NCBI GenBank assembly: GCA_965637545.1
Contig: OZ281501.1
Location: 16,740,001 to 16,804,000 of the forward strand
Source: Phallusia mammillata
Lineage: Eukaryota
Length of the DNA: 64,000 nt
Direction: 5' to 3'
Translations under genes and position numbers: made by a program
Notes under the pieces: generated by a model
What the model was told of the DNA's origin: nothing
The model's database searches: none
What the model saw: the letters and a program-made list of their open reading frames with translations, nothing else
Shown: one piece after another, positions 25,071 through 49,500 of the stretch
How the letters are laid out: the number at the start of each line of letters is the position of its first letter
How positions within the stretch are numbered: the first letter of the stretch is position 1

Positions 25071-25571
25071 TCACTCAAGAATGCTATCCTGCTCTTGTAC
25101 TGGTTCACAAGAGGTCGCTGTACAACCACAGGCCATTACCACATCCTTTGTATGACTTCTAACTGCCCCGTCGTCGCATACCAGGGAGTATTCGCGAGGA
25201 ATTGTGCTTGTAGGAAGGCAGCATTTACATGGGCCTGACAAAAACAATACACGGTATAAGGATTTTGTGTTTGCGTTTGTGCACATCCCGAAAAAATCGT
25301 ATTTCCATTTTAGTATTACCCCGAAAAATCTTACTTCAGCCTTGTGTAAATAAATACTGCGAAATATTAGGTCTTTATCCGGAAAATGTTAACAGTGATA
25401 CTGTATATGCAAAATTAGGATTTGGAAGCGTACCTCCATTGCTTGTAGGACATGCTCCTTCACAATAGCTGACGGATTGTGGTGTTGTCAACCAACACTG
25501 ATGCGAGTCAACCGTTGTGTTGATAACCACATCATGGGTTTTCACCACGCACGGAAAATCGGTTGGGATAC
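25071..25571 (-). CDS. Gene B C-terminal cystine knot (CTCK)
   Basis: [18 protein letters not shown]|[26 protein letters not shown], in exons 25434-25571 and 25071-25234. Confidence 0.88.
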
Positions 25572-28500
25572 CTGGAAAAAGATTTACATAATGTTAAACG
25601 TAGGTTAATGTAATACTATACGCCCGGGAAACGTTCTGTATAGTTGGCTTACCGCGTAATTTTGTGCATGTCATTTAGTGTTGGTAAAAAAAGTTAATGA
25701 CATTTTTACAGCTTATTTTTAATCGAAGCGGTGACGAAAAAAATAATAACAATTACAAAACTCTTTCATATTTTGGAAGGACAAAACGTTTTTATATCAT
25801 GAATTAATTGAAAAGATATGAAATCATTTTCAACGCGTGACGTCATCAATCTCACATTGGCGTCATAGTTGTTTATCACTTACAATATTTGCAACATCCC
25901 TCGGTTGTTTCATTGGGAGCCAGAACCCCTCCTTTCTGTAAACAACAACATGCATGGAAAGTGTCAGCGCATGTTAAACATAAATAGTATAAGCTATTGC
26001 TGCCAGGTATAATGTTAGACCAAGTATTGCTCATCCAGCAGTTTTTATTGTAAACAATCGACGTTTCGACGTCCTATACAAGACGCCTTCATCAGGATAA
26101 TGACATAACTTGCAAGACGAATGTCTTTTAAAGCGACAAAATGCAAAACACACACATGTAAAACAGCGATAACAAGATCGCGCGCTGCAAATTGCAAGTT
26201 ATGTCATTATCCTGATGAAGGCGTCTTGTATAGGACGTCGAAACGTCGATTGTTTACAATAAAAACTGCTGGATGAGCAATACTTGGTCTAATAAATAGT
26301 ATAAGTCACTTTTAAGGTAATCAAACATTTTTATGGGCATTGGTGTCTTTCATAAAGCTTAATTTAGTACCATATGCAGTATGTATGTGCATGTAACAAG
26401 CTTAATGTACGAGGGATAAACATGCCCTTTTGTTTAATGGAGGCGACATGATAACTTTTTATCGGTCGGTCGTCACATGTTGAGGCGGGGAGGGGCCTCT
26501 ACAATTAAGAAAAAAAAGCATTTTCGAGCTTTTTTGTAATCAGCTTGACATAAACTTAAAAAATTATAGCAGTCATACTAAAGTTATTTAAATCCCTTTT
26601 TTGTCAAATGCATAAATAAATTCAATGATCTCAAAGTGATTACCATCGACTTAAAAAATCTTGCCCGAAAACCGAAACCGATCTAACAATAAAATATACA
26701 ACTGTACTTACAGTTAAGCATGCTTCTGTATCAAAAGGTTCACATTCGTATTTCGGTTGTGTTACAACCTTTGGACATGAAGTTATTTCGTCGCGAACAC
26801 AAGAAGCCACTTGACAATGATCGGAAAATACGGGGAATGACGAACCAACCTTTAAATAAAGAAAGTGTAATAAAAACCTCAACAAACTTTAGTTAACAAA
26901 ATGTTACCACTTTTTAACGAAAAATGAACGCCGTATTAGCTATCATGCTTAATATTTTTTTAAATTGTGGGATGATGTTTAATTTTGTTTTTCGATTGTT
27001 GATGAAAACGCTGTGTTAAAGTATTGACAGAAAAGTAGTTAAGCCTGTTTACGTTTTACAAGCCAAGTTCAGGTAGCTTGGTAAAAAACTGCCAGAGAGC
27101 TTGAATACGGGTAAATCGCTGTTACCTTTTGATAATGAAATGGCTGTTATCACTTCAAGACTATAGAAGCAAGCGGTGGTTATCGAAAAGTCAACAATAG
27201 AATGTATCACAACATACCAGTTCTCTGGCTATTTTCACCATGATCAGAATACAATTTTGTGTCTTGGGTTTTGAAAATACTTACGGAATATGTTTGCTCG
27301 TTGAACACACACTTGTCGCACTCGCATTTATACTCAGGACAGCAGTCAGTATTAGTTAGTACTCTCTTCTCCCCGGCCGGGCACGTAAAATTCCAATGCT
27401 CACAAACTTTCATAAGTTCATTTTCTGGTAGACACCTGCATCCGTATGTTGGACAGCAAGGACCAGTGACGTTGTTGCGCTCTTTGATCTACAAAGCATA
27501 AAACGAATGGATTAACGCACTTTGTTCCAAATCTGTGTCTATGGCGGTTCATACAGTAAATAAATTGTTCATGCCTTGACCGTGTTTTGGTCTTGTCCAC
27601 ATCAATATTTAATAAAAATGTCGTGTTGCGTGGCTCCATACTTTGAAAGTAAAAATACGTAACTATTTGGCGTTACTTACAGTGTAACGTTCGTATCCCA
27701 GAGGACAGGTGAAGTCATCCCAATAATGGCAGCTATCAGCAAGCACTGAGTCATCTTCACAAACGCATGTGTGTTTAGGACAGCACTCTGAAGTATTCGA
27801 AAGTACACCGTCTTGCTTAGAAACCATATAAGTCGGGCATGTTATACCGCCGAAGTCTGGACAAATAACTTGTAGATATTCGTCTTGCTTGCACACACAT
27901 TTGTAATCGGTACAACAAGGATCTGGGTCCACATCGCCGGTGAAAATAGCCGCTTCGGTATACAGGTTGCAGTACATGTATTCAAACTGGGTCTGTGACT
28001 TGCAAGAAACACGCGGGTCCCTAACAACTTCTGCTGCGTAACAGTCAACGGTTGGAGTAACCTTTTCCATGTTGGCGTCATATGTGAGAGACGATGAAGC
28101 CAACTTGTCTGTACAATTCCATGTAACATTACAACCATTTCCGACGTCAACTTTCCAGGTATGGCCGACAGGTACCGAATCGCCGTTGTCTAATATACAG
28201 ACTTTCTTGCAAACACAAGTGTACAATGGGCAGCAATCGTTTGTAGCGGGATCAGTTTCACCCGGAACACGGTAAACATCCTGGTGTACAGATTCGCAAT
28301 CAAAGGGTGGACATCCTGTCGAACCATTCCGGCAAACGACCTTTAATTCTGGGCAACACTTCTGCAGTGGGTTCTCTTCAATAGTTTTGTTTACATATTC
28401 TTCGTAGGAAGCCGGTGTTTGTGGTGGATACGGGTGATATGTAGGCGGGCACGTATCACATACACACGAATACTGCGGGCAACAAACACCGTCTGTGAAC

Positions 28501-31500
28501 TCACGATGGACACTCTCTCCTGGGCCACAAGTAAGATTTGACCCAGGACAATATGGGTCTATGGCATCGTTACCATAGCAGTCGCACTCTTTCTGAATGC
28601 AGCAGCCTTCGGTATTGGGCACACTGTAAGTTGTTAACGGTCTACGTCCTGGTTCGTTGCATATTTCAGGGGTGACTTCCACGGCCGGGCAAACAATAGC
28701 AAGCACATCAGCAGTTTTACACACACACTTAAATTCTGTACAGCAAGTGTCTGGATTGCTCTCGCCTGTTCCGTTGATGATGGCTGTTTGGTAAATTTCA
28801 TTGCACCTGGTCTTCTGAAACTCGCTTTGACTGAGACAGTAGCGATCGTGGTTAAAGCTTTTAAGTGTGTAACATTTCTCAGGGTGGGTTTCATTTCTAT
28901 TGGTGGTACACGTGTATGTAACTAAACACCCATCGCTGCCTTTAACGGTTTCAGTCGTTCCTGGTTCCATAAGTGATCCATCATCACGAATGCACTTACT
29001 ACATATGCAATGCTTTTCAATGCAGCAGCTATTTGGGTCTACCACAGTTTCATCATAGACCACTTCCACCAAATCTTGATGCGCCTCACAACGGGGATAG
29101 CTTGGGCATGGCAGGGGTACAGAGGATGGTATGTAACAAGTCCTATTATCAAGTTTAGTCGTCACCTGACACGTGTAACTCAAATGGCAACCAGATGCAT
29201 TGATATATGTCCAACTGGTTCCAACAGCATGCAAACTGCCACTTGCGTCGTAACAACTGTTACAATAGCATGAATCTATTGTACAGCTGCAATCATCTGT
29301 TGTAGTGGTTTGCTCCCAGCCATTTGGACAACTATGATTAGGATCAGAAGGTATACATGTGTTGCACACACAGCCGTAAGTTGGACAGCACGGTCCGTAT
29401 ATTGGATCCACTGCGGCTATAACTTCCACATGCTGGTTGGGGCGACAAGAGTGTTGAGTGATACTGTAGTTCGGGCACTCTTGTTGGTAGGTTGGTGGGT
29501 CGTCGGCACATACACACACTCTTTCCTTGTAACATTCGTACGTTGTCCAGTTGCTAAGAACTTGTCCGGGTTTGGAACACAAAGGTGGAGGGCGTTCCGG
29601 GTAGGACTCACATTCTGAAAGTTACAAGTAACAGATTGATTAGTCCACGATATTGAAATACAATTCAGCATTTAGTGTATAAATCATACTTCCAAAACAG
29701 TTTGGTTTGATTATGCTATATTTGTAAATTTTGTCCCATCTATAAACAGGTTAGTTTTATGAAGCCTTTTGAAGCACAGCGTCAATGAAACGCAAAGGTA
29801 CATGCTAAGTTGTTTTATGTAAATCTTTTTTTTTCATATATTCCAGCTGTATGTACCAGTACCATTACTATGCCTAATTACAATCAAATAGTCAAACTTA
29901 CCACACGTGAAATCGCTACAGCAAATTCCATCTCGTCTGCTTTCCACAGCAACCTGTCCCTCTATAGTGCAGTACTGATTTTCGTACTGTTGCTTAGTAG
30001 TGCAGTCATCCACTTCATGCCAAATGGTTTCCTCAACATGACAAGTATCCTCTTGTAGTCTATCGGTGCACAGTTGAGTGACGTTGCAACCGTTTGCGTC
30101 CACGTAAGACCAACGTTCACCAGGCTGTCATAGGTTACAGAGAACTGAGTTAATATGACATATTAAAACCACAATGTGACATGATGTCTGTGGTGTTAAT
30201 GGTGCATGTAAACAAATTCAATACAATGCAAGACTTGATTGAAAAGTTAAACTTTTTTGGGTCTTAACGATGGTGCAGGATATTGAACAGTTTTTTTATA
30301 GGTTGTTACTAACGATATTTTAACGTCTCCGCCCAAAACCAGACCTGAACAAGCAAATTCTTTACCGGTCAACCGTAGCGGAATGCAAAAAGGTTCGAAA
30401 CTCATTTATGTGGGGCGTTTTATAGTAGTTCCATTGCCACCTTACTATGGCACCAATATAGCGCAAAAATGAAGATTCATTTTCTTACTGGAACGATACG
30501 GCATATGTTGATATCGACCCGAAATTTCAATATATTTGTAACCAATTTACGTAAATAAAAGTAAAACAATTGAATGGCAACGTAGAATATAAACATCACT
30601 GAGACATAAAACCGTAAAGATTATCAAGAGAATTTAAAGATCGTGGAGAAATGATATAGCTGAAAATAGCAGCATTCAGACTCTCAGTAAAATTAGGCGT
30701 TAAGGCGCTTCGGCTAACTTTCACCAATGTATCAAACACAAAAATGAATTACAAATTTCACCTTTCTTATTTCTCCGTTGTCTAGCACACAGTGCGTACA
30801 AAGCATAGTGTAGTTGTGGCAGCACGTGAAAGTGTCCGAAGGCATATTTTCTACCTTTACAATTTCCCAACCTATTGGAACTGTAAAGTTATGCCAAGTT
30901 GGACAAATTACGTCAAGTTCCTCTTCGGGTTTACAAACGCACTCGTAAGCGCGAGGGCAACACACCGAGTCCTTTCGTTTTACCTCCACCTGTGACAAAG
31001 CATAAAAGAAATGTTGAACTTTTACAGATATTCTGGTTGGATTGTGCAGGATTTTATAACTTTATTCAATTATTGCACAAAATCAGATTAGGTTATAACT
31101 ATTAAAGCTGTACTACATTATATATATTTCACCATTCTCAAATGATTTTATATTAGCTGCAACGTGTTTTGCTATTAGCGTACCTACCGTTTATGCCCCC
31201 TCATATAAAACGTTTTGGTTGGTGTAACTGTAATGCTTTTGCCATATTTTCTTTTACCAAGCAAAATAACTCAACTTAAATTGAACGTGAGTATATTGTA
31301 TCTATGTTTTTACAGGGTATATTTTGCTTACTCTGTTTTCTGTTGGGGCGCACTTCTTTGGTCCGATCTCATCTTCACACTTTTCTGGTACACATACGCA
31401 TTCGATAAGTGGGCAGCAGTTTGCATAGTAAGTTTCATCCACAACGTGTTGTGTGAAGTAAGTTTCATTACACAGTGGTTGGGGGTAGTGGGTCTGGCAT

Positions 31501-34500
31501 TGAGTTTTGTTGCAAACACACTCCGAGCTTTTGCATCCACATTCACTAGGATAAGTTGCGCTGTGAAACAAAACAAGTTTGCGTTACTTTAAATGCCAAC
31601 CGTATTAAAGTGATTTTACTTAACTTAGATTTTACCAAAAAAGTTCAAATCATAATTTAATAATCTTAAATGAGTAGTAAGCTTATAGGCAGGAAAGGAA
31701 CAGTATTTGTAAATATTAGCGTGTGGTTCGCCTGACAATTACCGGGGTCGCCTGACAATTTGCCTGGGATCGCCTATGGCATGGTTCCCAACTTGTTTTA
31801 GGTCATGGACCACTAGCCCCAATAAAATAAAGCCATGGATCATATTATTGTTGATAAAAATTACAGTCAATTTTTGGTCACCGTAACTTGGTAAATGGTA
31901 TCAATGGACCACGGCACCAGAAAGGTTGGGAACCGCTGGTCTAAAGGTTGCATTTGGTTTTTAGGCAGAATAAAACTAACTACATTTCAACCTTGTGATG
32001 TCACATCGAACTATGTATACCCTTATGAAGATTGATAAGGTGTTGAGATACAGAAAACCTAATCAAAATGCCGTTGGTACATAAGTGACTACAGTGAACA
32101 CTTTATCTGCCAAGAAACACAGATACAAACAACAAATGGCAATTCTTACTCGTTTTTGTAAGAAAGCGACCATGAAGTAGAACAGTTCTTTTCCACAGGT
32201 GGGCATTCCGGACATATGCATTCGTATACCGGACAGCATGAACCCTCTGGTGTAACATCAGTACGAATCAAACGAGAGTCATCACATTTGTAGTCGTACC
32301 TAGAAAACAAAAAAAATGTTTACCAAGCAAATTTACGAACTCTGTGACGTGTACATATTGTGTCATGAGGAATATAATACCCCAATATCACTGACAATGA
32401 CACAGGCAGCAGCCTAAAGGCTTGGGAATTATGGATGTTTCTTTTCTTATCTATTTGCGCATTTATAGTTTAAATTAAACATATAACCGCGTTTTAAGCA
32501 ACCACATTTTTGGTATCATTTTTTCAGATGCAGAGTGCACTTTTCCTTCTCAACATATAGTATAAAACTGTAAAAAATAGACATGCATATGAAACAGAAC
32601 GGATAAACCAAAAACCGATTTGACCCCGAAAAAACAAAATCTCACCACTGTGGGCAAGTTCCTTGCAGTGTGGAGTTCTCTTTGCATACACACTTAAACT
32701 CTTCACAGCAAACATCGGGGTCCGACTGTCCAATTGAATACTGTATAGCCACCGCTTTCTCGTACACCAAGTGACAATGCCCTTGTTCGTAGTCACCGGC
32801 GCTTTGACAGTGGTCCCGTGGGTCGTATATAATGCCTGGTCGGAAGCATCCGTCACTCAGCTTTGCACTTGTACAGATGTGTGTCTGCATGCAGCCATCG
32901 GCGTCAGGAAGCGTCAAGTTTTCACCTGGCAGCTTGCACGTGTCATCTGGCATCTGACATCCAATACAGGTGTCAATGTAACCGGGACAGCAGTAGTTTG
33001 GATCTGAGGAGTCTTTGGAAACCTCGTGGCAGATTTGAGGGGCAGGGGTCACGGGTGGAGGACATTCATTGCAAACACATTCAAATTCGTCGCAGCATAG
33101 GTCAGGGTCTGGAGACTTTATGGCTATAACTCCATGTTCAAACGAGTGGCAATACGCATTTTCAAAGTCTTGCAACTTCTGGCAGTAGTCTCTCGGGTTA
33201 TGCGTGTCTTCTTTGTAGCAGGAAAGCTTATCTCCTATGCGTTCATACGTGCACACGTGTGTTGTTACGCAACCGCTGGCGTCAGTAGTATTCCACGTAT
33301 CACCAGGATTTTTGCCAGTACCATTAGGTAGAACACATTTTTTACACTCGAAATCGTATAACGGACAGCACTTCTGGTTGGGATTATCCTCTCTGGGAAC
33401 TTGTTCATGGTGGGGAGGAGGGGTCGACGGCTCAGACCAATCGCTGCTACAGTTGTTGCAAACGCATTCAAACTCTGTACAGCAAATGTTGGGGTCTTCA
33501 CCAATTCCGTGTTCTATTTTTTCCAAGTGTTCGAACTCACTGCATTCTGCGCTTGGTTTTGTGATACATGCAACAGGAACGGGCACAGCTATGAAGCACC
33601 CGTCACTGCCTATGCTTGAGTTAGCCAGACATTTGTATTCAATGTCGCATCCTAAAAGGTCCTGACCGTACCAGGAGTCACCAATCAGAACCACATTGCC
33701 TTCGTTGTCTTTACATGAATCACACACACATTCAGTGCTGTTGCAGCATTCGCCTACCACCGAAACAGACTTATAACCGTAGTCACAATACTGATTAGTA
33801 GGCGCTGGACATTCAGGGCAGACACAACCATAGTTAGGACAGCAGGGCCCGTAAATTCTATTGTCGTTTGGATAGGGAATTTCTATGTAAACCCTCGGCG
33901 GTAGGCAACTGGCAGGGAAGTAGTTCGGACAGTCTCTATGTTCGATGTCAGTGTCATTCACACAAACACAGTCTATCTTGGGAATACAACCATCGTAGTA
34001 AATAGGTCCATGGGTTTGTGCGGGCCATGTACATTTTGGTGGTTGCTCTACGGTAATATTCTTGTCGCACACTGCAAAAATAATAAGAAAATGGTTTCAA
34101 GACAATTACACAGACAACTTTTTTCATTTCTTGAGCAAACGATGGTTTTAGGGCTTCAAGCAGATGACAAAAGTGCATGTTCAAATCGAAGGTATTAGTT
34201 TTGATGTATTCCCCTTGTAATTTGTTTAGATGGCTTTAACAATTTTATGAACTGTTTTCTCTTAACATTTGCCTTAAATACCCTCTTGTTTCTTGCGAGT
34301 TACAATACAGTCAAACTTCGATACTATGCCACCCTTTGGGACCGAGAGAAAGTGGCATAGTACCGAGGGTGGCATAATACCGAGGGTTGGTTGTAAAAAT
34401 AGCCTTGTGACGTGACAATGTACTGTAATGCCACGTTGTGTTGTATGATTGTAATTTATTACAGTATACAGTATAATTTATTACAAAAAACGGCTAGATC

Positions 34501-37500
34501 GTGCATAGAACAAACAAGATCTGTTAGTTTTGTTGTGACACAAGCACGGAACGGCGTTTACATAACTCGTTGCAAAGCCGTGAAACCTCTTAACATGACC
34601 ACGTTTATTTACTCAACGATTTGTTTTTCATTTTTTCTCTGTTTTATCATGAGCTCAAACCGAAAATTGTCAGAAGGCCCAATTTTTAATCCGGAACCAG
34701 ACCGTTAATACAGTAATACTGTACTCTCATGTGTCATAGTATCAAGGGTAAGGGGTGGCATAGTAAATATATTTTCTATTGAATTTAGTTGGTGACGATC
34801 AAAAGTGGTATAGTAGCGAGGGTGGCATAATATCAAGGTAGCATAGTATCGAAGTTTGACTGTATGAGAGAAACAAAGCACTGTAATGCAGTCTATACAT
34901 GTAACTTTATTAATATACCCCAAAACGTTACGAAATCAGAGCTTACCGCATGTAAATTCATCGCAACATGTGTTTGTTCCGGGTTTTACTTGTGGGATTT
35001 CACCAGGATTAGGACACACATGGTTTTCGATCTTCTCGCACTGGTCACGTGACTTGCTGACGTCAACTGCAACGTTGCACGTGTCGGGACCAAGCTCGTT
35101 TGAACAGTTTTTCAGCACCGTGCAGTCACCGTCAGGCTCCGACCATGTCTCTCCAGGCTAGATAAAGAAAGTTTTATTTACCATTTTTGCACTTGTTTCA
35201 CAAATACTTCAACTCTTTGGTATTTTGCCACGTTACTTATGTTTGTGGTTACTAAAGTCATTGAATTTAATTGTGTAACACACTGTTAACTAAAAAGAAA
35301 ATCATACATATCTCTTCCAAACGATACGAATACATTACATTGTACATAGTTGTTACCTAATATTTCGCTTAAACACACAAAAATAACCTTTCAAAGGATA
35401 TTTAAAAATCAAGTCGGTTTCGATCTTTACACACCACATCAGTTAAATCGTATAGCATGGGTGATTCAGTATGTTTAACAAACAGACATAAACTCACCAG
35501 TTTCAAAACTGTTGTTCCATCTAGTTCGACAATGCAGCCTAAACATACGATGTGATACCTAGGACAGCATTTCTGGTTTGGGTTTTCTTCAAGGGTAAAG
35601 GGCACAACTTTGTGAAAAGCGTCGACAGTCGGTGGGTTGGGATCAGAGTCGCACAAGTCAAGGTTGCAAACGCATTCGAAAAGGTCGCAGCATAATGGCT
35701 CACGGGTGTCCAGCACATTTGCAACCTCAAACTGTGTACAATTCGCCGACTGGAAATGGGATTTAGGAATACATGTATCGTTTTCCCTGTGTGTGTATTC
35801 CCACTTCATGCATTGATCTGGGTCGGTTGTTTTCGAATTGGTACATACTTTGACATTGACGCAGTATTCTTCCACCACGCTGACTGACGAGCCAATTTCA
35901 TAATAAGCCCCTTCGTGATGGCAAGTATTACAAACACAGCGAGTTGTAGTGCAGTTACACTCGCTTGTAGGGTCGGGTATGTCTTCACCTATATAACCAT
36001 CGTCGCAATGGATAATGATTTCCTGACATTTCTTACATGCAACTTTATACACTGGGCAACATGGGTTGTCTGGATTGACTGGGGATGGCCATATTTCAAC
36101 TATTTCTTTTTCGTCTGTCAGTTGATTATGAGCTTCCTGATAACCAGGACAAACAGTTTGCAAGTATTTGGATTCATTCTTGCAGACACACTGCTCAAGA
36201 TGGTAACAGTATGGCGATGTGATGTTGACCACGACTTCCCCGATATTTTCACATGTCGGCGTTGTTGGAGGGGGTTTACACACTACAAGGAAAAAATAAG
36301 GATTGAAACTAGAGTAGCGGAATTTTGAAGCAAAAAATCACATGCAATTGCGATGGAACTAAACATGTTTCTGTGTTTCTCAAACCTAAATGAAGATAAT
36401 AGACAAATCAGTGACCGAAAATCAGTGACCGAAAGAGTTCTTTTCTATTGTACAAATTTTTAGTGCAAAAAATTATCTATTTTTCAAGCTTTTCCTAAAA
36501 CATCATCACTATCGACAATTTAGACATTCTCTGTTAATGGAGGTTTTAAGATATGTAAGAGGGCCCGAAACTGAAGGTACAAGCCCGAACCCTGACCTGA
36601 ACACTAATTTACAAAAAAACGCCCAAATTGGACCCGAAACGTGGTAAAATTACTGCACAAACGAGGCCGAATTTAAAGTCCAGCTAGCTTCATTTAAACG
36701 TTGGCGTGAACCTAGCCCGACTTACAACTCTGTTTATAGCAGCTTACTTACCACATGCGTAATGTTTGCAGCAAGTGTCGTATATAGGAAGCTCCTGGAC
36801 TATCTCATCATCGCGACATAATAATTCGTCTGGATTCTGACACGTATCTTTCTCATTGTGCTCCACTATGCTGACGTGGCATGAGTCAGCACCAATGGTC
36901 TCAGTACATCTGTACGTGACATTGCATCCGTCCACATAATCGTTCCAAATTTCACCAGGCTAGAGTAACAAAAGTATGTCGGTGATAGTGTTTTGAGTAA
37001 GACAGTGTTAAGTTCACCGAAATTCTATTTGAAAACGCTACGTTTAACAATTTAAACCGTATGGCGTTTGGAGAGTGTGATAGCCTACCAAACTTTTTAC
37101 TCAAAACAGTTTGCACATTTTTATTGTATCATCTTCAACAGTGAAAATACAGATTCTGTTTAAATAAGGAACTAATGTTAAAAAACAAACAAAAACATCT
37201 TCGTGTCCAAATTACTAAATGACAAAATGTATGTTTTTTTAGTTTAACAATCGCATAAAACAACTGCAGTGCCAGAACTTAAACAGCACTGGATCTATTC
37301 GAATACTAAAGATACCGAAGCATGTTTTTTGTAGAAAAACAGATCTAAAACAAACTTTCGTGAAATTAATATGTGATTTACAGAAATAAATATGTATTTT
37401 TTCAAACTTTTTTTGCACTCTAGTAATATGCTATACGTTTTTCCATGTACATTTTGACTTTAAAAGGCAACAAATTTACTCACATATTTGAATGTGTATG

Positions 37501-40500
37501 AATCCACGATGCAGACAGGGCATTCGAGATGTGGACAGCACTCGCCCTCATCTCGTACCCATGTATGTCCGGGTGGTGGCGCTGTGGTGTTACACTTGAC
37601 TGCTTCACACTGGTAAACTGTGCAACAATCCTCGCAGGTGTTGTTGTTCAACGGCGCCTTGTGTGAGGTGAGTGTGGTACAGATTGGACACACAGGTGGC
37701 GAAGGACATAAGTCGGGGTTGCAAGAACAGCCTCCTTCGATGGGACAACCACAGGCATCCTGCTTGGTTGCTGCAATGGTACGTTCAATGTTGAAAAAGT
37801 GAGGAAAATATATTTTTAAAATTACGACGCCATCAGTGAATGTATTATTGTGATGTAATATTTTAAAATCTGACATTTATACACAATTTATCATTGTTTT
37901 CATTGTTGTTTTTATCAAAGAGATCAATTGAAAACATCGTTAGTGATTTTCTTGGGACCTTTTTACAAAAAAACATATCAAAAACGTCATTGTTTTTCTT
38001 CTAAACAATTTTTTTGAGTTAAGTTCGTCCATAGTCAAATAACAGTTATGTCTCTAACCGTTTTGTGGCATTATGTTTAAAAGGAACAGTATACACGGAC
38101 CTAATTTTTTTTATAAATAAGCTATTGCTGCCAGGCATAATATCAAGTTTGTAGAGCTCTTCTGGCAAATGTATTTTTATTCCGACGCTTCGACGTCCTA
38201 TACAGGTCGCCTTCATCAGGGTAAATAGCACTGAATGCGACTAGTACACTGGACTAATTGATTTTGTATTCTATATACACCAGTTCTTTGGCTGTTATGT
38301 TTATGATTAAATGTTTAAACTTAGTTCAACAAATCATTTTGTTTATTAGAACCGTAATGTTTAATTTAAATATATATATACCACATAATGTTTCCTTACT
38401 TTTCCATTTGCATCCAAGGAGATAGGTGCAATTAACATCTGGCTTACAGTGGATCACATCTGGGCACACGCATTGATACTTTAGGCATGTTGTGTTGTTA
38501 ACAGGGATTGCTACCATCGGGGCTTCACACGTAGGTATATAAGGCTCCTTGCATTGGCATATTTCAGTAGGACAACAGTCGTTTTCAGTTCCTCCTAATG
38601 TGACCAGTTCCTCATCAGCGGTACAGTTTGGTTTTGATGGGCATTGGCAACCTGGGAAAGCAGAAAAACACAATAGATTTAAGTGCATTAAAAACATTAA
38701 GTCGTTAGTCCCTAAGATTTTGGGATGTACAGGCGAAATGTTCTTTAGAAACCTAAATCTTTGGACATAAGGTTCATTACAGTTTTCATCCACTAAGTAC
38801 CGAAAAGGATAAATACATTTTCAAGTTTAAGTGCCAGTATTACAATTACAATATGAAATTGATCGGTAAAGCACCATAGCCTTAGTTTAGTTGGCATAAC
38901 ACCAGCCGTAGTGTATTCCAATTCTACCAGGAACTGGTTTTACAAGATACTCTTTGTTGCCCAAACCTGCATCAGAAACGGCAAAATGTTTGGCTCCCAT
39001 TCCCAGGGTTTAACTTTTGCAATTTAAGGACAGAAACTAATTTTCAAATAAACAACGAAGATACTTAACCGCTTCTGTACAACAATTTAACATATACCTT
39101 GTGAAAACACAAACTTATCGAACTAAACAATCACTTACATCGTGGTTCAACGCATTCGCCAGTCATTTGATGTAACACCAAACCGTCTGTACAGAAACAA
39201 CCGCTTGTCGTATCAGTGCTTGTACAAGTGCCGGGAGGTTTGAGATAGTCAAGGCAAGTGGTGGGTTCGTCACACACACTCACGCATGACTTATACACCA
39301 TGGAATTCCCCGTACAAGGAACTGCAAAATAAATAGAGAGTGAGGTTAAAATTTTGCACGGGAAAAACGTCTTGTTTTATATGATGACCAAAACAACAGT
39401 TTCAGTAATGATGATATTATTCCTTACCTGTGCAATTGGCCTTTTCTTTCCAGTTGACGCAAACGTTCTTACTCATACATAATTCCGCGTAAGTATGAAC
39501 TGCGCTCGAATCACACACGTCGCACTGTGAAAGATAAAAGACTTTATTTCTTGCAATGTTTTTGTGCGTTGATTGGGCCAAACAAGTATTTTTAGGCTAT
39601 ATTTTATGGGGGTCTGGCATAACTTTTCAGCCTGTTACTACGAACAAACTGGAGTGCTGTTAAGTGACAATAGCTCATATGGCCAATCTCTTGTACCAGC
39701 TATCATTGAGACCTTATAGGTCAAAACTATGTGCACTGGCTGCAGCTTTTATTGTGTTGTTTTAAAGTTTTCGATACATTTAGATACACAATAAAGAGTT
39801 ATTATAAGTTTAATTTTACCGCCAAAAAGTTTAGCTTTAATCCAGGGCTTTACAAAAAAATTGTATGAAATACTTTTGCAAGCTGAATAATAGTTTCACG
39901 CAAAAATATGCCGAAGTCTTAATTTGTCATCGTCATTCACTTACTCTTCCCCAGGCATAGGCGTCTTCTTTGCAGGCAATCAGATAACTCGTCATGTTAA
40001 TCAATTCTCGACATTCGGCGAATGCTTCAGATGTCAGAATTTCACAGCCATCGTCCACACACTTGTTACAATACGTGGGTAGCGGATCCACTCCCTCTTT
40101 TCTGAAAAGGGACAAAGAAAACCAAACAGTCACATGGATGCAAAATATTACCGAAACAAATGAATAAACCCTCAAAAACCACCATGAATAACAGTTATGA
40201 TGGTAACAGTGTATGCGGAAACAAAACGTCAAGACCAGATACTAAGGGAAAGCATATGTTGTCTAAAAAGCCCTTCAATTATTTAAACGAGTATAGTTAA
40301 AAGCAATGAAATTTGTTTTTTCGGAATATGCAAATATCCGAAACATTGCTTTGTTATTTTATCGATTTTGGTATAGAAATTAAATCTTTGCGACTCACAA
40401 GGATATGCAAATAAACGTTTTCTACTCTCAGTATGCAATAGAACAGAACATTTGATTTACTGCAATCTGTATTTGCTACTCTGGCTTGATTGCTTCATCG

Positions 40501-43500
40501 ATATTAAATCCCATTCGCAAATTAAAGAGTTTGATACCTAACTTTTTATGCTCATTGTCTTTGCGTGTAACCAAATTAACCGCGCTTTTGTCCACATAAT
40601 CTGAACACAAATCATTTTACCTCAGTGTTTCACAATCCTTCCCACATCCAGGATCACGATTTTGATCACAAACGCATTCAGTGTCGTTTTTCTCCACAAG
40701 CCAACTGTCGCCGAAATCATCAGGCTGAATAATTAGGGTTCCGTTCTTGGATTCGAAATCATCTGTCTGATTATTGGAGCACGTACCTAAGTGTACATCG
40801 GACATGTATTTAGTTGGGATATTTAGAAAACGGGTTGCAGTCAGGCAATAAGGAATTAATAAAGAGACACATTTTTGTAGTATTTTATCCTACAGGCTTA
40901 ATAAAGCAAGTTTGTTTAAGAAGTTTCTTTAACCGATCATAGGAAATACATTTGTAGACTTTTTTTTTTTTAAACCGTCTTGTGTGGTCCTTTAGGTCCA
41001 ATCATCAAATAATACAGATCAATGATGTTGACACGCGAAGCCATTACTACTTTGACATATAGTAATTAAACACTCCTTTCATAAGGTTGCCGACTTGTTC
41101 GGCTAACATTGTTTTTCATATTTGAAGACGTAGAAATGGTTATCTTTGTGATCAAATTCATTCGCAAATGACAAGTTTCGAACCCAGGATCTCAAGTCTT
41201 ACTTACCGCACAATCCGACAGTTTTGTTGAACATAGTCGAATAGGGAATGTATATGATTGCCGTAGCAATAGAGGACAGACTGTATTCCACACGAACATG
41301 TAGATGAGGAATTGTAAGTACCACCCGTCCACCATAGTTAACAACCACGATTCCTCCACCCATCGGAAAGAAAGGAAGAACCTCTCTTGAGCCGTTTACG
41401 TAAACCTAAGGTGCACAAACATATAAAACTCATTTTGAAAGTTGAACATGCAACTTTTGTGCATATAGTTCTAATGAAGCGTTGGCTGGAAAACTTTGGT
41501 GGATTGGGGATTTAAACTAGTGATGTACCGAATCGGCGAAATTTCGATTCGGCCGAAACCGAATATTCGGCGGTTTCGCCGAATAAATTCGGCCGAATCA
41601 ACCGAATCATTTATGACGTCACGCGAAGTCGTACGCTACGCGTTTGACATGAAAATTTTTTTTTATCTACCAGGCAATTAGTGCAGAATAGTTGTGTTTC
41701 GTCCTCATTTCAGTTCTGTAGGGTTTAAAATTGCCTCAAGCATGATTGGCAACCTGTCAATGAGTTGCTAATTTTTTTGACAACAGTGGGAAACCGATAA
41801 TGTGTTGAAATGTGTTGAAAAAGATAAAAATTGACGCGATTTTCGTTATGTTTGGGCTTTTAAAAGATTTGCGTGGTACCTTAAGCAGAAAAGACACGTT
41901 TAACGCTTTACATTTATGTTCGTAAAAGATTCGGTTTCGGCCGAATCGCAACAAATTATTCGGCCGAAACCGAATCTTTGCAAAAATGACCGATTCGGCC
42001 GAATAAATCCGGCAAACCGAATATTCGGTACATCTCTAATTTAAACCCACTATTAGAGGCGCTATGTATGTATGCTGCCATTGATCATTTTGTATGACAT
42101 TAGTTAATAGACGTTGCGTACGTGTATAAAATTCCCTAATGCCAAAATGTAAGGTTGTGTGTATGTATTTTAATGTGCATTTTTGCCCTGTTGGCAAATG
42201 TTAATTGGTCAGGTTTTAAAGTTCGTTTAAAAGTTCGTCGTTAGCAGATTAAAATCAGTCCACGAAATTATGTGGTTTATCAAAAAGTTAAGAACTAATC
42301 TACAGAACACAAAACCACAAACTGGTCCAACGTACCATGTAAGTCCTCATGGTCTCATCATACCCCAACTCGACTTCAGTGCCGTCCCAGACTACAAAGA
42401 TTTTCTTCAAACAAGTCAATGTCGAGTTGTCCACCACTGCGCATATTGTGTTGTCGCTAAACAAGCAATTAGGAATTAGCCACAATTGCAAGGATATTTT
42501 AATGTTTTCACCAAAAGGACTTATGATTTTAGACGAAAACCTTTGTTAAGCTACTTACCTGTATATATGAAGGCGGTCTGAATCCCTGTATGTTACCAAT
42601 GTGTAATGGCAAGCACCCATGAATGCGTAAGCAGTGCTATCGAAAGTCACATAATGAGGATCTCCAAAAACGCTACAGACGCCTGTATAAAGTATCGAAG
42701 GCAAATAAAGATGCAATTTAAGTAATAGAAAACAGTTTATATTACAACACCAAACCTCCTTGTCACAAAATATGTTACGGCAAGGTAATATACTGGGTAC
42801 TGTAAACCGTTAAACTTGTACGCAGGTTGTACAAAAAACATATTGTTGTATAAGAATAAAAATGTGTACACTGATGATGGCTTAAACATTTGCCAAAATG
42901 TTTGAATATTATAAAGCGTGTCGCCTTTTACGTCTATTTGAGCCTTTATTTTCGTTATTAAACTTACTAACAGATTCATGCATAGTGTTCAAGCATAAAC
43001 ACTTATCATGCATCGAAAAATTTTGTCCTTAGATTGCATAGAAAGTCATGTGTATGTTTTGTAATTTAGAATTCGACACGACAAGTTTGAATTCTACCTA
43101 ACCAGAAAATCATAAACGGCAAACTCAGCCCACTTACATTGGCACTCGTATGTCGGGCAACAGTGATCAGATGGATTGTGTACCACGGTAGGTTGCCATC
43201 CATTCACACACTTGGGCTTTACAGTGTTCGGACAGTTATCCAATGACACGATATTGCAGCTATCACAGGAACACGAACACTGCTTACGCTGGCAAGCGAC
43301 CTTCCAAATATCACCGTTCTGAAACACGAGATTTAATGTTGTCAGCGCAAAAACAGATACAGTATCAATGTCTATATAAGTGTTCAGTTTCTTTTATGCC
43401 TTTTAGTATATGGTTTTATTTTGAAAGCTTTTTGTTATTGTTACACCTGAGAACAAACGTATCTTCATTTTAAAGCTCATTTTGAAACGTTCAAAAAGAC

Positions 43501-46500: not shown

Positions 46501-49500
46501 TTAAACTGCAGCGTGACAGTGTAGTCTACTAACCGCATGTGCTGTTGATGACGCAACCGCAGTGCGATGACGTAACGGGGGAGCATCCGACGGCAGGACA
46601 GTGGGCTTCGTCTAGGCAGTCGACCGTGGTAAGGTCGGGACATGTACAGTTGTGTGTTACGCAGTGTAAACCGCCGTCATTAAGATAAATCGTATCAACG
46701 GACTCGGGATAAACACATGTTGGTGAATGGGCGGTATCCGGATCATATTCCGGACGACAAACTGAACAAGAAATAACACTTACATAAAAGGTTTGATGAT
46801 AGCTTTAAAATTGTTGTAAACAGTTTTTTCTATACATATTTTAGCCTTTTATTGCACTAGGAAATGATGTAATATAAAAAATGAAATCAATCTCCTTTTT
46901 TCTTAAGAAAAAAAAAACGTTTAGAATCATAAAAAATATTTTATCAAGTACATAGAGCCAATACAAACACTTATTGTGTTTTAGAAAAAATTCTTAACAG
47001 AAAGCACAAACCAAGTTATCAATTCAAAACTTTCGGTTAACCAGCTTCAATTTCGCACGCGGCAACGCGATATTTTTTCGCAACAATATATTCTTGTAAA
47101 CCACAACAAGCATTGTTCTTTGTCACAAAGTTTAACTGGTGTAAAACACTGACCCTAACACTTACCACACTCGATTCCTGGACAGCATTCGCCTGGGTGT
47201 TGTGTCACAATTTGTTTGGCGTAATAAGGGCATTCCACTGTTCCCACTGGAGGGCACTCGACCGCATTTGATTTTACTTTGTAACATCCCATGTCGTCTG
47301 ATACGCATTGCAACACTGTGCAGTTCTCCTCCCATGTGTCACCAGGACTCTGTGGAATCACACACAAGGCTCATATGTGGCTTGTGACTTGTAACATACT
47401 TTTAAAGGTGTAATTGCTTGATGTGGTGTGTCAAATCTGATTAATCCTACAGGTCATGCAAAGCATTTAAAGCCAGTACTTCAGGCCAGGGTACTTCGAC
47501 TTGCCAACTACCACACATAAAATTTTATCGTGTATTGAATTGGTTAGGTTAATGAACACATATGTGTAATCCCAGATGTGGCGATATGTTGGAACTGTTT
47601 TACGGGCTGTGCTGAAATGAAAGGTATTTTTAGAAGTTACCCTGGAAAATCTAATAATGGTGTACCTATTTGGTAACCTACATAAAGCCACAACAAATAA
47701 CACTGAAAATCCCTTCATATTTTAAACTAAAGTACTTAAAATTAAGTTTGTTAAGGGTTTTTTTAGGTTTGTGTCTTACTGTTGTGTCTAAACAGAGTGT
47801 AAAACTAAAGAAGAAAATTGCCTTAGATCCTTTGAAATTGATAAACAGCAACCGTTTATTTCCTGTTTAGGACTGATGATGCATATTTTTTGTGGGCGAA
47901 AGCGATATCTGCAGTGGTTTGTAATAAGAAATACACAGACTGATTTGAATTTGCTGAATTTGTCAGCTACGATGTGTCTGTGCATGGGACTGAAATAGTT
48001 TGTTGAACATCCGCGGATCAGGACGATTTCTGTATTAGCGCATCTTCAAATCGCAACCGTTTGTTTCTTATACAACCTGACATACCTTAAACTCTAAGTT
48101 GTAATAACATCCACTGCAGTTACAACTGTATTCGTCGCAGCAAGGGCCTTTGGTCGTGTGAAGTACTTCATGTGGCGCACAGTTAGGCTCTGGTGGACAA
48201 ATGACGGATTCACACGGGTCCACGCACATACAACAGTTCACACGAATTTCGTAGTCATTGCAAATCGGAGGAGACTGAACGAATGTGAAAATACCAAACG
48301 TTTCTATTACGATCAAGTGCTAACAAAAGTAGTTAAAAACATTTTACACTATTAAACACTAAACGTTATACACAATATGTATTAAAACTTCGGACATTTT
48401 ACACCACAAAATACCCCCAAATAACATTTATGTTGTAAATCTATCTAACAACATGTATTATGACTAACCTGGTCAACAATATGACAAATCAATCCATCAT
48501 TGACGTCACATGTCACGTGGTTTTGCAGGGGGGCGTTATGATCATGGGCGTTTCTGCATTCAATATCTCTCTTCAGGTCGCAGGTGTCGACATAGTCCTC
48601 CACCTTGCCTATAAGTTCGTACTCACCACCCTCTAATGCTGATGGATAGTTGTTATTCATCCAAGGTGACCATGAGCAAACCTCCACTTCACCAGCTGGG
48701 CAACCTAAAATGAGACATTTGTGACTAAAATCTGTAACATAGGTACACAATGCACAGTTCTAAATATTCTAAGCAAAAAGATACAAGCAAGTATTTGAGT
48801 GCAAAAAACATAACAACGTTTCGACAGTTTCCATTGCCATCGTTAGGTGAAATAATACCAACAGAAGGGATGTGTCCCGTAACATGTCATGTAGTTTATA
48901 CATACTGTTGGATTACACTCTTAAGAACATATTTTGATCTGTTGTAGCCTATACATACGTGTGTGTACAATGTCTTACATCGATATCTTGCCAATTAGCT
49001 TATTTTTACTGAGAATTTGCCGTTTTCGTGCATCTAATTGTTTTTTGGTTTGTTTTTTTACCCTGGTAACTTGCACTTTATTGCATCAACATACAAGTTT
49101 ACCTTTTGTATTTGTATCCGGACATTCACACTCGGTTGGAGGGACGCATGTCCGTTTGCTAGGGCTGTACAATAGACCGTCCTTGCACCTGATAAACGGA
49201 CAAACACATTTTATTAATACAGGTGAGAGAAAATTACAGGAAGCTATTACCAAGCAACATAGGTGGCGATAATTCTTTACATAAACTAGTTATCCCCACA
49301 TAGTGTACTAATACATATGCTAAATATGTGGAGGTTAAAAAGTTCCTCTCCACTCATTAAGATTTTTCGTATCCAATGAAAAACAAATCTGTTATGCTTC
49401 CCTCGAGCCATATTGCTGTTTTTTATTAAATATAAGTCGCCAACACGACTCAGACTCCACAATATTTCAAAAAAGACTCCGATTTAACTTTCAAAAGTGT

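What the first reader, a model, noticed from the sequence alone, without database searches (positions are those of the whole stretch)
25884..38651. About 2,100-aa Cys-rich rod replaces the short VWC tail; no PTS or VWA domain in gene B
vWF has about six C domains between D4 and the cystine knot, and mucins have fewer. Here about ten long modules (C..G...PG[ED]xW....GC.....C......C......C......C.......DP..CC..F.CVC) alternate with many 35-40 aa CP..C..CCPxYxCxC units. The region is about 12% Cys and rich in N-x-S/T sequons. Gene B has mucin hallmarks (CysD, C.W.YEPC in TIL3, GDPH) but no Ser/Thr/Pro-rich segment. This suggests a disulfide-stiffened, N-glycosylated filament rather than an O-glycan bottle-brush: a candidate structural fibre, mucous-net or clotting protein with a possibly undescribed repeat domain.
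Basis: partly seen in the sequence, partly recalled or inferred. Interest (0 to 1): 0.7.

Follow-up and report, generated by a model that had tools for sequence, protein, structure and literature searches.

The report
Sea-squirt VWF-like protein, giant cysteine stalk
A sea-squirt relative of von Willebrand factor and gel-forming mucins has no sugar-coated mucin region; instead the short cysteine-rich stalk before its tail knot is stretched to about 2,100 residues by some 32 very divergent VWC-type modules, a new variant of a known design whose tissue and role are untested.

Summary
Fourteen minus-strand exons (25884-38651, all AG/GT, 6,279 nt = 2,093 codons) lie between the D4 assembly and the cystine knot of gene B. 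Seven junctions and the 1.9-kb exon are confirmed by spliced transcript contigs. The region has 12% Cys, three times the N-x-S/T sequons expected by chance, and no Ser/Thr/Pro-rich frame anywhere in the window.

I count 10 long modules, 1 compact VWC-like module and 21 short units. No unit reaches Pfam VWC or any PDB sequence. An exhaustive search of 1.84 billion proteins found 10 relatives; the only named one is a Ciona savignyi fragment.

Best reading: a tunicate-specific, about six-fold expansion of the N-glycan-coated VWC stalk of a disulfide-polymerising protein. Roles as fibre, mucous net or clot are untested.

The scan already found the same design in a neighbouring paralog on other DNA (s1-403072).

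The parts
38448..38651 (-). Rod exon 1 (68 codons): two short Cys units directly after TIL4
   Evidence: AG/GT boundaries. The same exon follows TIL4 in another ascidian contig, L028.
37484..37770 (-). Rod exon 2: short units plus the N-terminal start (CIVDSYTFK) of long module 1
   Evidence: AG/GT boundaries. Orthologous exon in L028.
36752..36959 (-). Rod exon 3: remainder of long module 1 (PGEIW...CCKHYAC)
   Evidence: Matches the long-module HMM, E 1e-12. Also found by the genome search with profile A2.
35498..36282 (-). Rod exon 4: short units, long module 2 (35666-35932), Pro-rich short unit, start of long module 3
   Evidence: Donor at 35498 confirmed by spliced contigs. Module found.
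34947..35157 (-). Rod exon 5: remainder of long module 3
   Evidence: Both junctions confirmed by spliced contigs. HMM E 5e-11.
32646..34071 (-). Rod exon 6 (475 codons): three long modules (33458-33715, 33071-33337, 32684-32959) and five short units. It forms one super-repeat, collinear with the 1.9-kb exon.
   Evidence: Junctions confirmed. blastp against the mega-exon over 595 columns, E 2e-33. The structure model was built on 33071-33337.
32150..32299 (-). Rod exon 7: short unit
   Evidence: Junctions confirmed.
31332..31560 (-). Rod exon 8: short units
   Evidence: Junctions confirmed.
30762..30989 (-). Rod exon 9: short units plus the start of long module 7 ([10 protein letters not shown])
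   Evidence: Junctions confirmed.
29902..30124 (-). Rod exon 10: remainder of long module 7
   Evidence: Junctions confirmed. HMM E 4e-17.
27681..29614 (-). Rod exon 11, the 1,934-nt mega-exon: three long modules (29001-29255, 28719-28994, 27891-28199) and about nine short units
   Evidence: Acceptor at 29614 fixed by the loose end of the contigs. The 2,323-nt X6 contig runs 1,960 nt beyond the junction. A relative, P0001, is 40% identical (E 4e-122).
27285..27488 (-). Rod exon 12: short units plus the start of the last, compact VWC-like module
   Evidence: AG/GT boundaries.
26712..26849 (-). Rod exon 13: middle of the compact VWC-like module
   Evidence: AG/GT boundaries. Weak match to the long-module HMM.
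25884..25935 (-). Rod exon 14: end of the compact module (..EGCCKY + C across the splice)
   Evidence: AG/GT boundaries; the phase-1 T joins GT of the next exon to give Cys.
25402..25571 (-). Cystine-knot exon 1 (contains the CEGAC, i.e. CxGxC, motif)
   Evidence: Read directly from the sequence, AG/GT boundaries.
25077..25260 (-). Cystine-knot exon 2 (5' boundary approximate) and stop codon
   Evidence: phmmer against the VWF CTCK structure 4NT5, E 4e-4.
39134..42716 (-). D4 assembly exons upstream of the rod: VWD4 with GDPH (42558-42716), C8 (39936-40241), TIL (39134-39376)
   Evidence: Pfam VWD E 7.5e-10, C8 E 3e-4, TIL E 4e-6.
47158..47370 (-). Pre-D4 compact module of the same exon type (PGDTW...CCPGIEC). 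It bridges the rod's long module and canonical VWC.
   Evidence: Pfam VWC E 0.0026, 18.4 bits, profile positions 10-57. Aligns Cys for Cys with the long-module HMM.
48448..48759 (-). CysD domain of gene B
   Evidence: Pfam Mucin2_WxxW, E 1e-12.

Best explanation
Gene B encodes a secreted subunit of the VWF/gel-forming-mucin type: signal peptide, CUB, EGF, D1, D2, D'D3, CysD, Cys-rich central modules, D4 with GDPH, stalk, cystine knot.

The segment between D4 and the knot carries 3.5 VWC domains in MUC2 and six plus a truncated one in VWF. Here old tandem duplication has expanded it to 2,093 residues. It holds 10 enlarged VWC-type modules (FN1-like N-leaf, a short helical insertion, C-leaf), one compact VWC-like module, and 21 stand-alone C-leaf-type half modules comparable to VWC'. 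Every unit has an even number of Cys (10, 6 or 4), so each is probably internally disulfide-locked. Nearly every unit carries an N-glycan sequon, and the chain is acidic (D+E 15%, K+R 7%).

By analogy with VWF and MUC2 (inferred, not shown), the knot joins two chains tail to tail in the ER. The N-leaves pair the two stalks. The D assemblies link dimers head to head in acidic secretory granules. The product would be a long, protease-resistant, N-glycan-sheathed disulfide polymer whose spacer is a jointed rod of very roughly 100 nm per chain, rather than an O-glycan brush.

Shown here: the exon model and its transcription, the composition, the module census, the fold class of the long module, the relation of short to long units, and the restriction to tunicates. 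Inferred: disulfide pairing, dimerisation and multimerisation, rod length, and stiffening by glycans.
For: - Architecture: VWD, C8, TIL and CysD hits; CTCK against VWF 4NT5; CUB, EGF and VWD1 upstream of the window.
- Exon model and transcription.
- The nearest named ESM-Atlas clusters are all VWC.
- The compact sister module hits Pfam VWC at E 0.0026 and aligns Cys for Cys with the long-module HMM.
- Short unit equals the C-terminal part of the long module: hhalign probability 82%, E 1e-5.
- Precedents in PMC10082768: the MUC2 tail is VWC1-VWC'-VWC3-VWC4-CK; VWC' is C-leaf only; N-leaves mediate stalk pairing; spaced N-glycans seem to restrain flexibility; Dmax is 32 nm.
- Sequon enrichment, with at least one sequon in 19 of 19 long modules and 8 of 10 short units.
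- Old duplications: 26-36% identity between super-repeats. Kept in other ascidians at about 40% identity with the same exon order after TIL4.
Against: - The sequence link to VWC is weak. No rod exon reaches Pfam VWC even at E <= 1.
- Pfam VWC finds 52 canonical VWC elsewhere in this genome and none in this cluster.
- hhalign of the long-module profile against this genome's own canonical VWC gives only 22% probability over 16 columns.
- The CxxCxC signature is absent.
- The helical insertion is not a VWC feature.
- The disulfide pattern could not be read from the model. The short unit was never folded on its own.
- The D4-to-rod and rod-to-knot junctions are predicted, not seen in reads.
- No tissue, protein or polymer data exist.
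Confidence: 0.7

Rival explanations
1. The modules are a truly new fold or domain family unrelated to VWC. Their place between D4 and the knot and their Cys-rich look would then be convergence or replacement, not descent from the ancestral VWC stalk.
For: No Pfam, PDB-sequence or canonical-signature match. hhalign against canonical VWC gives 22% for the long module and 6% for the short unit. Foldseek finds nothing at E <= 1e-3. The short-unit array has no usable ESM-Atlas neighbour. Only 10 relatives exist among 1.84 billion proteins.
Against: The N-leaf matches FN1 repeatedly. All full-length structural hits are VWC domains. All ten best Atlas neighbours are VWC. The compact sister module bridges to Pfam VWC. 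The position matches that of the VWC domains in VWF and mucins. A C-leaf-only unit already exists in that stalk (PMC10082768).
Confidence: 0.12
2. The array works mainly as a ligand trap, not a mechanical spacer. Like the tandem VWC domains of chordin, kielin/chordin-like protein, crossveinless-2 or CCN proteins, the modules would bind BMP/TGF-beta-type growth factors, integrins or microbes and present them on a polymer.
For: The fold class is the same as the BMP-binding VWC domains, and CCN3 VWC is the best full-length structural match. VWF C4 binds integrin (PMC10082768). Many divergent copies could give many specificities.
Against: Dense N-glycan sequons on every module would mask surfaces. 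The context of D assemblies, CysD and knot is that of polymer builders. Four or more tandem paralogs repeat near-identical 3.5-kb cassettes, which suits length variation better than ligand specificity. No binding motif was identified.
Confidence: 0.1
3. The rod is not a working part of gene B. It would be a separate gene, a decaying duplicate or an assembly artefact that only looks contiguous.
For: The D4-to-rod and rod-to-knot junctions were not covered by the single reads call. Some run labels are guesses ('RNA?').
Against: There are 14 open exons with AG/GT boundaries summing to an exact multiple of three. Spliced contigs come from three runs of two studies and are absent from the DNA run. 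Cys scaffolds are conserved at 26-40% identity among super-repeats and other ascidians. Another species has the same TIL4-then-rod exon order. The phase-1 splice into the knot exon recreates a Cys.
Confidence: 0.03

Closest known systems
C-terminal stalk of MUC2/MUC5B and VWF (D4 - VWC1 - [VWC2] - VWC' - VWC3 - VWC4 - [VWC5-6] - CTCK; PMC10082768)
   Same: It sits in the same position, between the D4 assembly (with GDPH) and the cystine knot. It mixes full two-leaf VWC-type modules with C-leaf-only truncated modules. It carries spaced N-glycan sites and no O-glycan domain. The expected result is an elongated, paired, jointed stalk in a tail-to-tail dimer.
   Different: It has 32 units and 2,093 aa, against 3.5 VWC in MUC2 and six plus VWC' in VWF. 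The sequences are too divergent for Pfam VWC. The CxxCxC signature is lost, and a terminal CxC is present instead of the canonical single Cys after the CC pair. A helical insertion of about 30-45 residues sits between the leaves. Half modules outnumber full ones two to one.
Ci-GFM1, the described Ciona gel-forming mucin of the gut chitin membrane (PMC6109156)
   Same: It is a tunicate protein with a D1-D2-D'D3-D4-VWC-CK scaffold shared with VWF and MUC2.
   Different: Ci-GFM1 has 2,880 aa, only two VWC domains, chitin-binding domains and a small PTS region. Gene B has no PTS or chitin-binding domain in the window, has a CUB-EGF cap, and has a 2,093-aa stalk.
Kielin/chordin-like protein, chordin, and other proteins with long tandem VWC arrays
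   Same: They carry many tandem VWC-type modules in a secreted protein.
   Different: Their modules are canonical VWC domains recognised by Pfam. This genome has such an array on contig C7 at 13.47 Mb. They act as BMP modulators and lack the mucin/VWF frame of three N-terminal D assemblies, D4 and CysD.
Neighbouring paralogs in the same cluster (C8:16.63-16.76 Mb), including the 7,284-aa protein of earlier scan finding s1-403072
   Same: They have the same long and short modules after D4. All 48 genome-wide matches of the long-module profile lie in this one cluster.
   Different: The paralog at 16.63-16.65 Mb lengthens its stalk with near-identical 3.48-kb cassettes, which are recent duplications. 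Gene B's super-repeats are old, at 26-36% identity.

Membership tests
VWC domain (Pfam PF00093 / PROSITE VWFC) | Scores at or above the Pfam gathering threshold (27.6 bits) | tested here: not met
   No rod exon hits VWC even at E <= 1. A genome-wide scan finds 52 VWC elsewhere and none in this cluster. Only the pre-D4 compact module reaches 18.4 bits.
VWC domain (Pfam PF00093 / PROSITE VWFC) | Ten-Cys signature with CxxCxC and CCxxC spacing (pattern recalled from PROSITE PS01208, so approximate) | tested here: not met
   There were 0 matches on the window's minus strand, even with a loosened pattern. Ten of 10 canonical VWC from the same genome match the loose form and 8 of 10 the strict form. 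The rod modules do have 10 Cys, but arranged C...GCx5C...C...C...C...CCx4CxC.
VWC domain (Pfam PF00093 / PROSITE VWFC) | Two-leaf fold: FN1-like N-leaf (hairpin plus three-stranded sheet) and a C-leaf | tested here: inconclusive
VWC domain (Pfam PF00093 / PROSITE VWFC) | Profile-profile similarity to canonical VWC | tested here: not met
   hhalign gives probability 22% over 16 columns for the long module and 6% for the short unit.
VWF / gel-forming mucin scaffold | Three N-terminal VWD-C8-TIL assemblies plus D4 | tested here: met
   VWD, C8 and TIL hits on exons at 60.3, 56.6, 52.2, 50.2, 42.7, 40.2 and 39.4 kb. VWD1 lies just upstream of the window.
VWF / gel-forming mucin scaffold | C-terminal cystine knot (CTCK) | tested here: met
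   phmmer against the VWF CTCK structure 4NT5, E 4e-4. The CxGxC motif is in the preceding exon. Pfam itself gave no hit on the single exon.
Gel-forming mucin (sensu stricto) | Large Pro/Thr/Ser-rich O-glycosylated domain | tested here: not met
   No real STP-rich frame (threshold 50% over 40 aa) on either strand of the 64-kb window. No extra exon appears in transcripts across 29.8-35.8 kb.
Gel-forming mucin (sensu stricto) | CysD (Mucin2_WxxW) domain and GDPH in D4 | tested here: met
   CysD E 1e-12. GDPH read directly in the VWD4 exon.
von Willebrand factor orthologue | VWA (A1-A3) domains between D3 and D4 | tested here: not met
   All coding exons between 49 and 43 kb are Cys-rich modules. 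The five longer non-Cys ORFs there gave no VWA hit. This was not an exhaustive scan of every short ORF.

The most novel reading that the evidence does not exclude
Gene B and its tandem paralogs are the structural filaments of a tunicate extracellular filter or fibre, most attractively the pharyngeal mucous feeding net secreted by the endostyle. The tunicate-specific module family would be an innovation that turns a mucin/VWF polymer into a stiff, N-glycan-sheathed rod. Rod length would be adjustable by cassette duplication and would set mesh or fibre dimensions.
Probability: 0.2. Interest if true: 0.7.

Novelty: new variant of a known kind. Interest (0 to 1): 0.45.

Why it matters
Mucins and VWF are the textbook cases of disulfide-linked extracellular polymers. 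Their spacer is either an O-glycan brush (mucins) or A domains (VWF), and the VWC stalk is short.

This gene and its cluster show that the same polymerising frame can be lengthened through the stalk itself. It uses full and half VWC-type modules so divergent that no family model finds them.

Three practical consequences follow:
- It offers a natural system for testing how VWC leaves, knuckles and N-glycans set the stiffness and pairing of such stalks.
- It provides about 30 new sequences for building a family model that current annotation lacks. A Phallusia relative is automatically named 'Notch 1-like'.
- It gives concrete candidate genes for the still poorly defined protein make-up of tunicate secreted nets and matrices.

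Tried and rejected
- Pfam on all rod exons and on eight database relatives gave nothing.
- phmmer of the two largest exons against PDB sequences gave nothing relevant.
- The word-index protein search with the 639-aa exon found nothing, although the exhaustive search later found a 700-aa relative. That blank was therefore a sensitivity limit.
- The first AF2 run, with only 7 paralogous modules, gave pLDDT 50 and was discarded. Adding modules from paralogs and other ascidian contigs raised it to 90.6.
- Foldseek against PDB had no significant hit.
- The short-unit profile against PDB sequences and the ESM Atlas gave nothing.
- Literature searches for 'von Willebrand factor-like'/'VWFL' with 'endostyle' returned no paper in the held library. 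From memory, VWF-like endostyle marker genes have been reported in Ciona, but I could not check this.
- The Styela thyroglobulin-like protein paper (PMC12992692) was considered because the rod is Tyr-rich (5%). That protein is a Tg1-domain protein and unrelated.
- I did not try to decode the organism. Run and genome names are coded, and 'tunicate/ascidian' rests on the Ciona savignyi and Phallusia mammillata relatives.


Full report
WHAT IS THERE

The window holds two tandem minus-strand genes of the VWF/gel-forming-mucin kind. Gene B runs from beyond the window's right end down to a stop codon at about 25.07 kb.

Pfam confirms C8 at 60.3, 56.6 and 50.2 kb, VWD at 52.2 and 42.7 kb, C8 and TIL of D4 at 40.2 and 39.4 kb, and a CysD at 48.4-48.8 kb. 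The last exon matches the solved VWF cystine knot (4NT5, E 4e-4), and the exon before it carries the CxGxC motif. Ten kb upstream of the window I found a likely signal peptide, a CUB exon, an EGF exon and VWD1. The order is therefore CUB-EGF-D1-D2-D'D3-CysD-(Cys-rich central exons)-D4-rod-CK.

THE OBSERVATION

The finding's coordinates are exact exon ends. I modelled 14 exons between 38651 and 25884. All have AG/GT boundaries, and they sum to 6,279 nt = 2,093 codons.

One reads call over 29.8-35.8 kb showed contigs from three runs of two studies (X1, X2, X6) that skip exactly the predicted introns, with CT..AC ends on the plus strand. The DNA run X4 covers the introns and shows no such joints. 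A 2,323-nt contig continues 1,960 nt past the 29902 junction, and its loose end matches the start of the 1,934-nt exon. The rod is therefore transcribed and spliced as modelled, and no extra exon is used in that stretch.

Composition was measured exon by exon over 1,722 aa:
- Cys is 12.1%.
- There are 34 N-x-S/T sequons, against 11.6 +/- 3.0 in shuffles.
- S+T+P is 22.5%.
- D+E is 15% against K+R 7%.

No real Ser/Thr/Pro-rich frame exists anywhere in the 64 kb on either strand. The non-Cys ORFs tested between D3 and D4 hold no VWA.

Counting CC-x(2-6)-C motifs gives 32 units: 10 long modules, one compact module before the knot, and 21 short units.

ANATOMY OF THE MODULES

The long module (85-103 aa) has ten invariant Cys, arranged C-x4-G-x5-G-x2-W-x7-GC-x5-C ... 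C ... C ... C ... DPxxCC-x4-C-x-C. Three copies are split by an intron just before PGExW. Seven copies lie unsplit inside large exons, so introns were lost or gained at a fixed module position.

The short unit (30-42 aa, six Cys, CPx..C...CCPxYxCxC) matches the C-terminal part of the long module by profile-profile comparison (probability 82%, E 1e-5). A Pro-rich four-Cys variant (..EENPxQKCCPxYxxxC) precedes several long modules.

The rod is built of old super-repeats. The 475-codon exon aligns end to end with the 1.9-kb exon at 27% identity (E 2e-33).

Every long module in the 19-sequence alignment carries at least one sequon (mean 2.2), and 8 of 10 short units carry one. The sites sit at shifting positions. 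This suggests selection for glycan cover rather than for particular sites.

IS IT AN ORDINARY VWC?

By sequence it is not:
- No rod exon, and none of eight database relatives, hits any Pfam family.
- The Pfam VWC model finds 52 canonical VWC exons elsewhere in this 240-Mb genome and none in this cluster.
- A profile of the long module compared with a profile of this genome's own canonical VWC gives 22% probability over only the first 16 columns.
- The CxxCxC...CCxxC signature (recalled from PROSITE) is absent from the whole minus strand, while it fits the genome's canonical VWC.
- PDB sequence searches give only a marginal FN1 match to the first 32 residues.

By fold and descent it probably is:
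- With 19 paralogous and orthologous modules, AlphaFold2 gave a confident model (pLDDT 90.6). It has a hairpin plus sheet in residues 1-46, two short helices in 48-62, and two further strands.
- The same answer comes from protein-language-model neighbours, which are all VWC at score 0.81.
- A compact sister module in gene B (47158-47370) scores E 0.0026 on Pfam VWC over profile positions 10-57 and aligns Cys for Cys with the long-module HMM.
- The position between D4 and the knot is where VWC domains lie in VWF and mucins.

The cryo-EM study of the MUC2 C-terminus (PMC10082768) supplies the missing precedent. VWC domains consist of an N-leaf and a C-leaf joined by a Cys knuckle. [quoted passage not shown] N-leaves pair the two stalks of the dimer. 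Evenly spaced N-glycans appear to restrain stalk flexibility. The sea-squirt rod is that design enlarged about six-fold, with half modules outnumbering full ones.

DISTRIBUTION

- An exhaustive HMMER search with the 639-aa exon against 1.84 billion representatives found 10 proteins at E <= 1e-3. The only named one is a 187-aa uncharacterised fragment from Ciona savignyi. The rest come from environmental assemblies.
- One such contig shows the same C8-TIL4-then-rod exon order.
- A related gene made almost only of short units exists on contig C6 (2,181-aa open frame). Its 2,427-aa Phallusia mammillata relative carries the automatic name 'Notch 1-like'.
- In this genome all 48 matches of the long-module profile lie in one cluster, C8:16.63-16.78 Mb. 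That cluster holds at least four tandem paralogs, one of which repeats near-identical 3.48-kb cassettes.
- Earlier scan finding s1-403072 describes that neighbour as a 7,284-residue VWF/mucin-like rod protein. The present gene is a second member of the same design.
- The described Ciona gel-forming mucin Ci-GFM1 has only two VWC domains and chitin-binding domains (PMC6109156). Lang et al. list 17 multi-VWD proteins in Ciona without describing such stalks (PMC4948705).

HOW IT MOST LIKELY WORKS

The frame and the stalk are shown here; the rest is inferred from VWF and MUC2. The knot would make tail-to-tail dimers. N-leaves would zip the two stalks. D assemblies would make head-to-head links in acidic granules. 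GDPH in D4 may cleave at low pH.

With about 21 VWC equivalents, and roughly 5-6 nm per VWC (my estimate from the 32-nm MUC2-C particle), each chain would contribute a jointed, N-glycan-sheathed, acidic rod of the order of 100 nm. The polymer would be a disulfide-locked filament rather than a hydrated O-glycan brush.

The structure it builds (feeding net, gut membrane, tunic, clot) is unknown, because run metadata were coded and no proteomics is at hand.

LIMITS

- The D4-to-rod and rod-to-knot junctions are predicted only.
- The disulfide pattern is unknown.
- The joined spliced protein was deliberately not assembled or searched. All searches were done exon by exon.

VERDICT

This is a new variant of a known kind and moderately interesting.

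Noticed in passing
L042:230-5950 (G000:C8:16804230-16809950), just right of the window: Gene B's 5' end lies outside the window. It includes a likely signal peptide (MIAMWGNLLCILATFIVTVQA..), a CUB exon (about 3843-4163), an EGF exon (about 2295-2492) and VWD1 (about 1358-1594 and 234-494). Gene B therefore has a CUB-EGF cap like the TSP1-TSP1-CUB-EGF cap noted for gene A.
   Followed up: partly
window 34222-35025 and 31609-32010 (introns of gene B): In the DNA run X4 these intron stretches have contig depths of 7,500 to 208,000, against about 300 for flanking DNA. Introns of the rod therefore carry very high-copy repeats or mobile elements, and some copies also appear in the transcript-like runs.
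   Followed up: no
window 27681-38651, module boundaries: The same position in the long module (just before PGExW) carries an intron in 3 copies and none in 7 copies that sit inside exons of 785-1,934 nt. A relative of the largest exon is likewise a single open frame (P0001; the 695-aa frame in L026) in another ascidian, so the fused state is old.
   Followed up: partly
G000:C6:15200027-15204019 and 15257575-15257916 (L016-L018); proteins P0002, P0009, P0020: A second gene family on another contig has 2,100-2,400-aa single open frames made almost only of the short CCPxYxCxC units with a few VWC-like modules. Its Phallusia mammillata member is automatically named 'Neurogenic locus notch homolog protein 1-like', and no Pfam domain is on record.
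   Followed up: partly
protein P0004 (2,328 aa, environmental contig): This relative starts with a kringle-like segment (CKNVTRSGKTCQAWH...FCRNPDRD..WCYT) and a Gly-rich stretch before the Cys-unit array. I did not see that combination in the window's genes.
   Followed up: no
window 32644-34071: Transcript contigs differ from the reference at about 2.7% of positions in this exon (26 of 971 nt in X6), mostly by transitions. This fits the high polymorphism of ascidians, or a closely related strain, rather than editing. No DNA from the same individual was available to tell.
   Followed up: no
G000:C8:16629708-16649041: A paralog downstream repeats a 3.48-kb cassette at least five times. Each copy has a ~600-aa open frame of the same modules, and match scores are nearly identical, which indicates recent tandem duplication of whole Cys-module exons.
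   Followed up: partly
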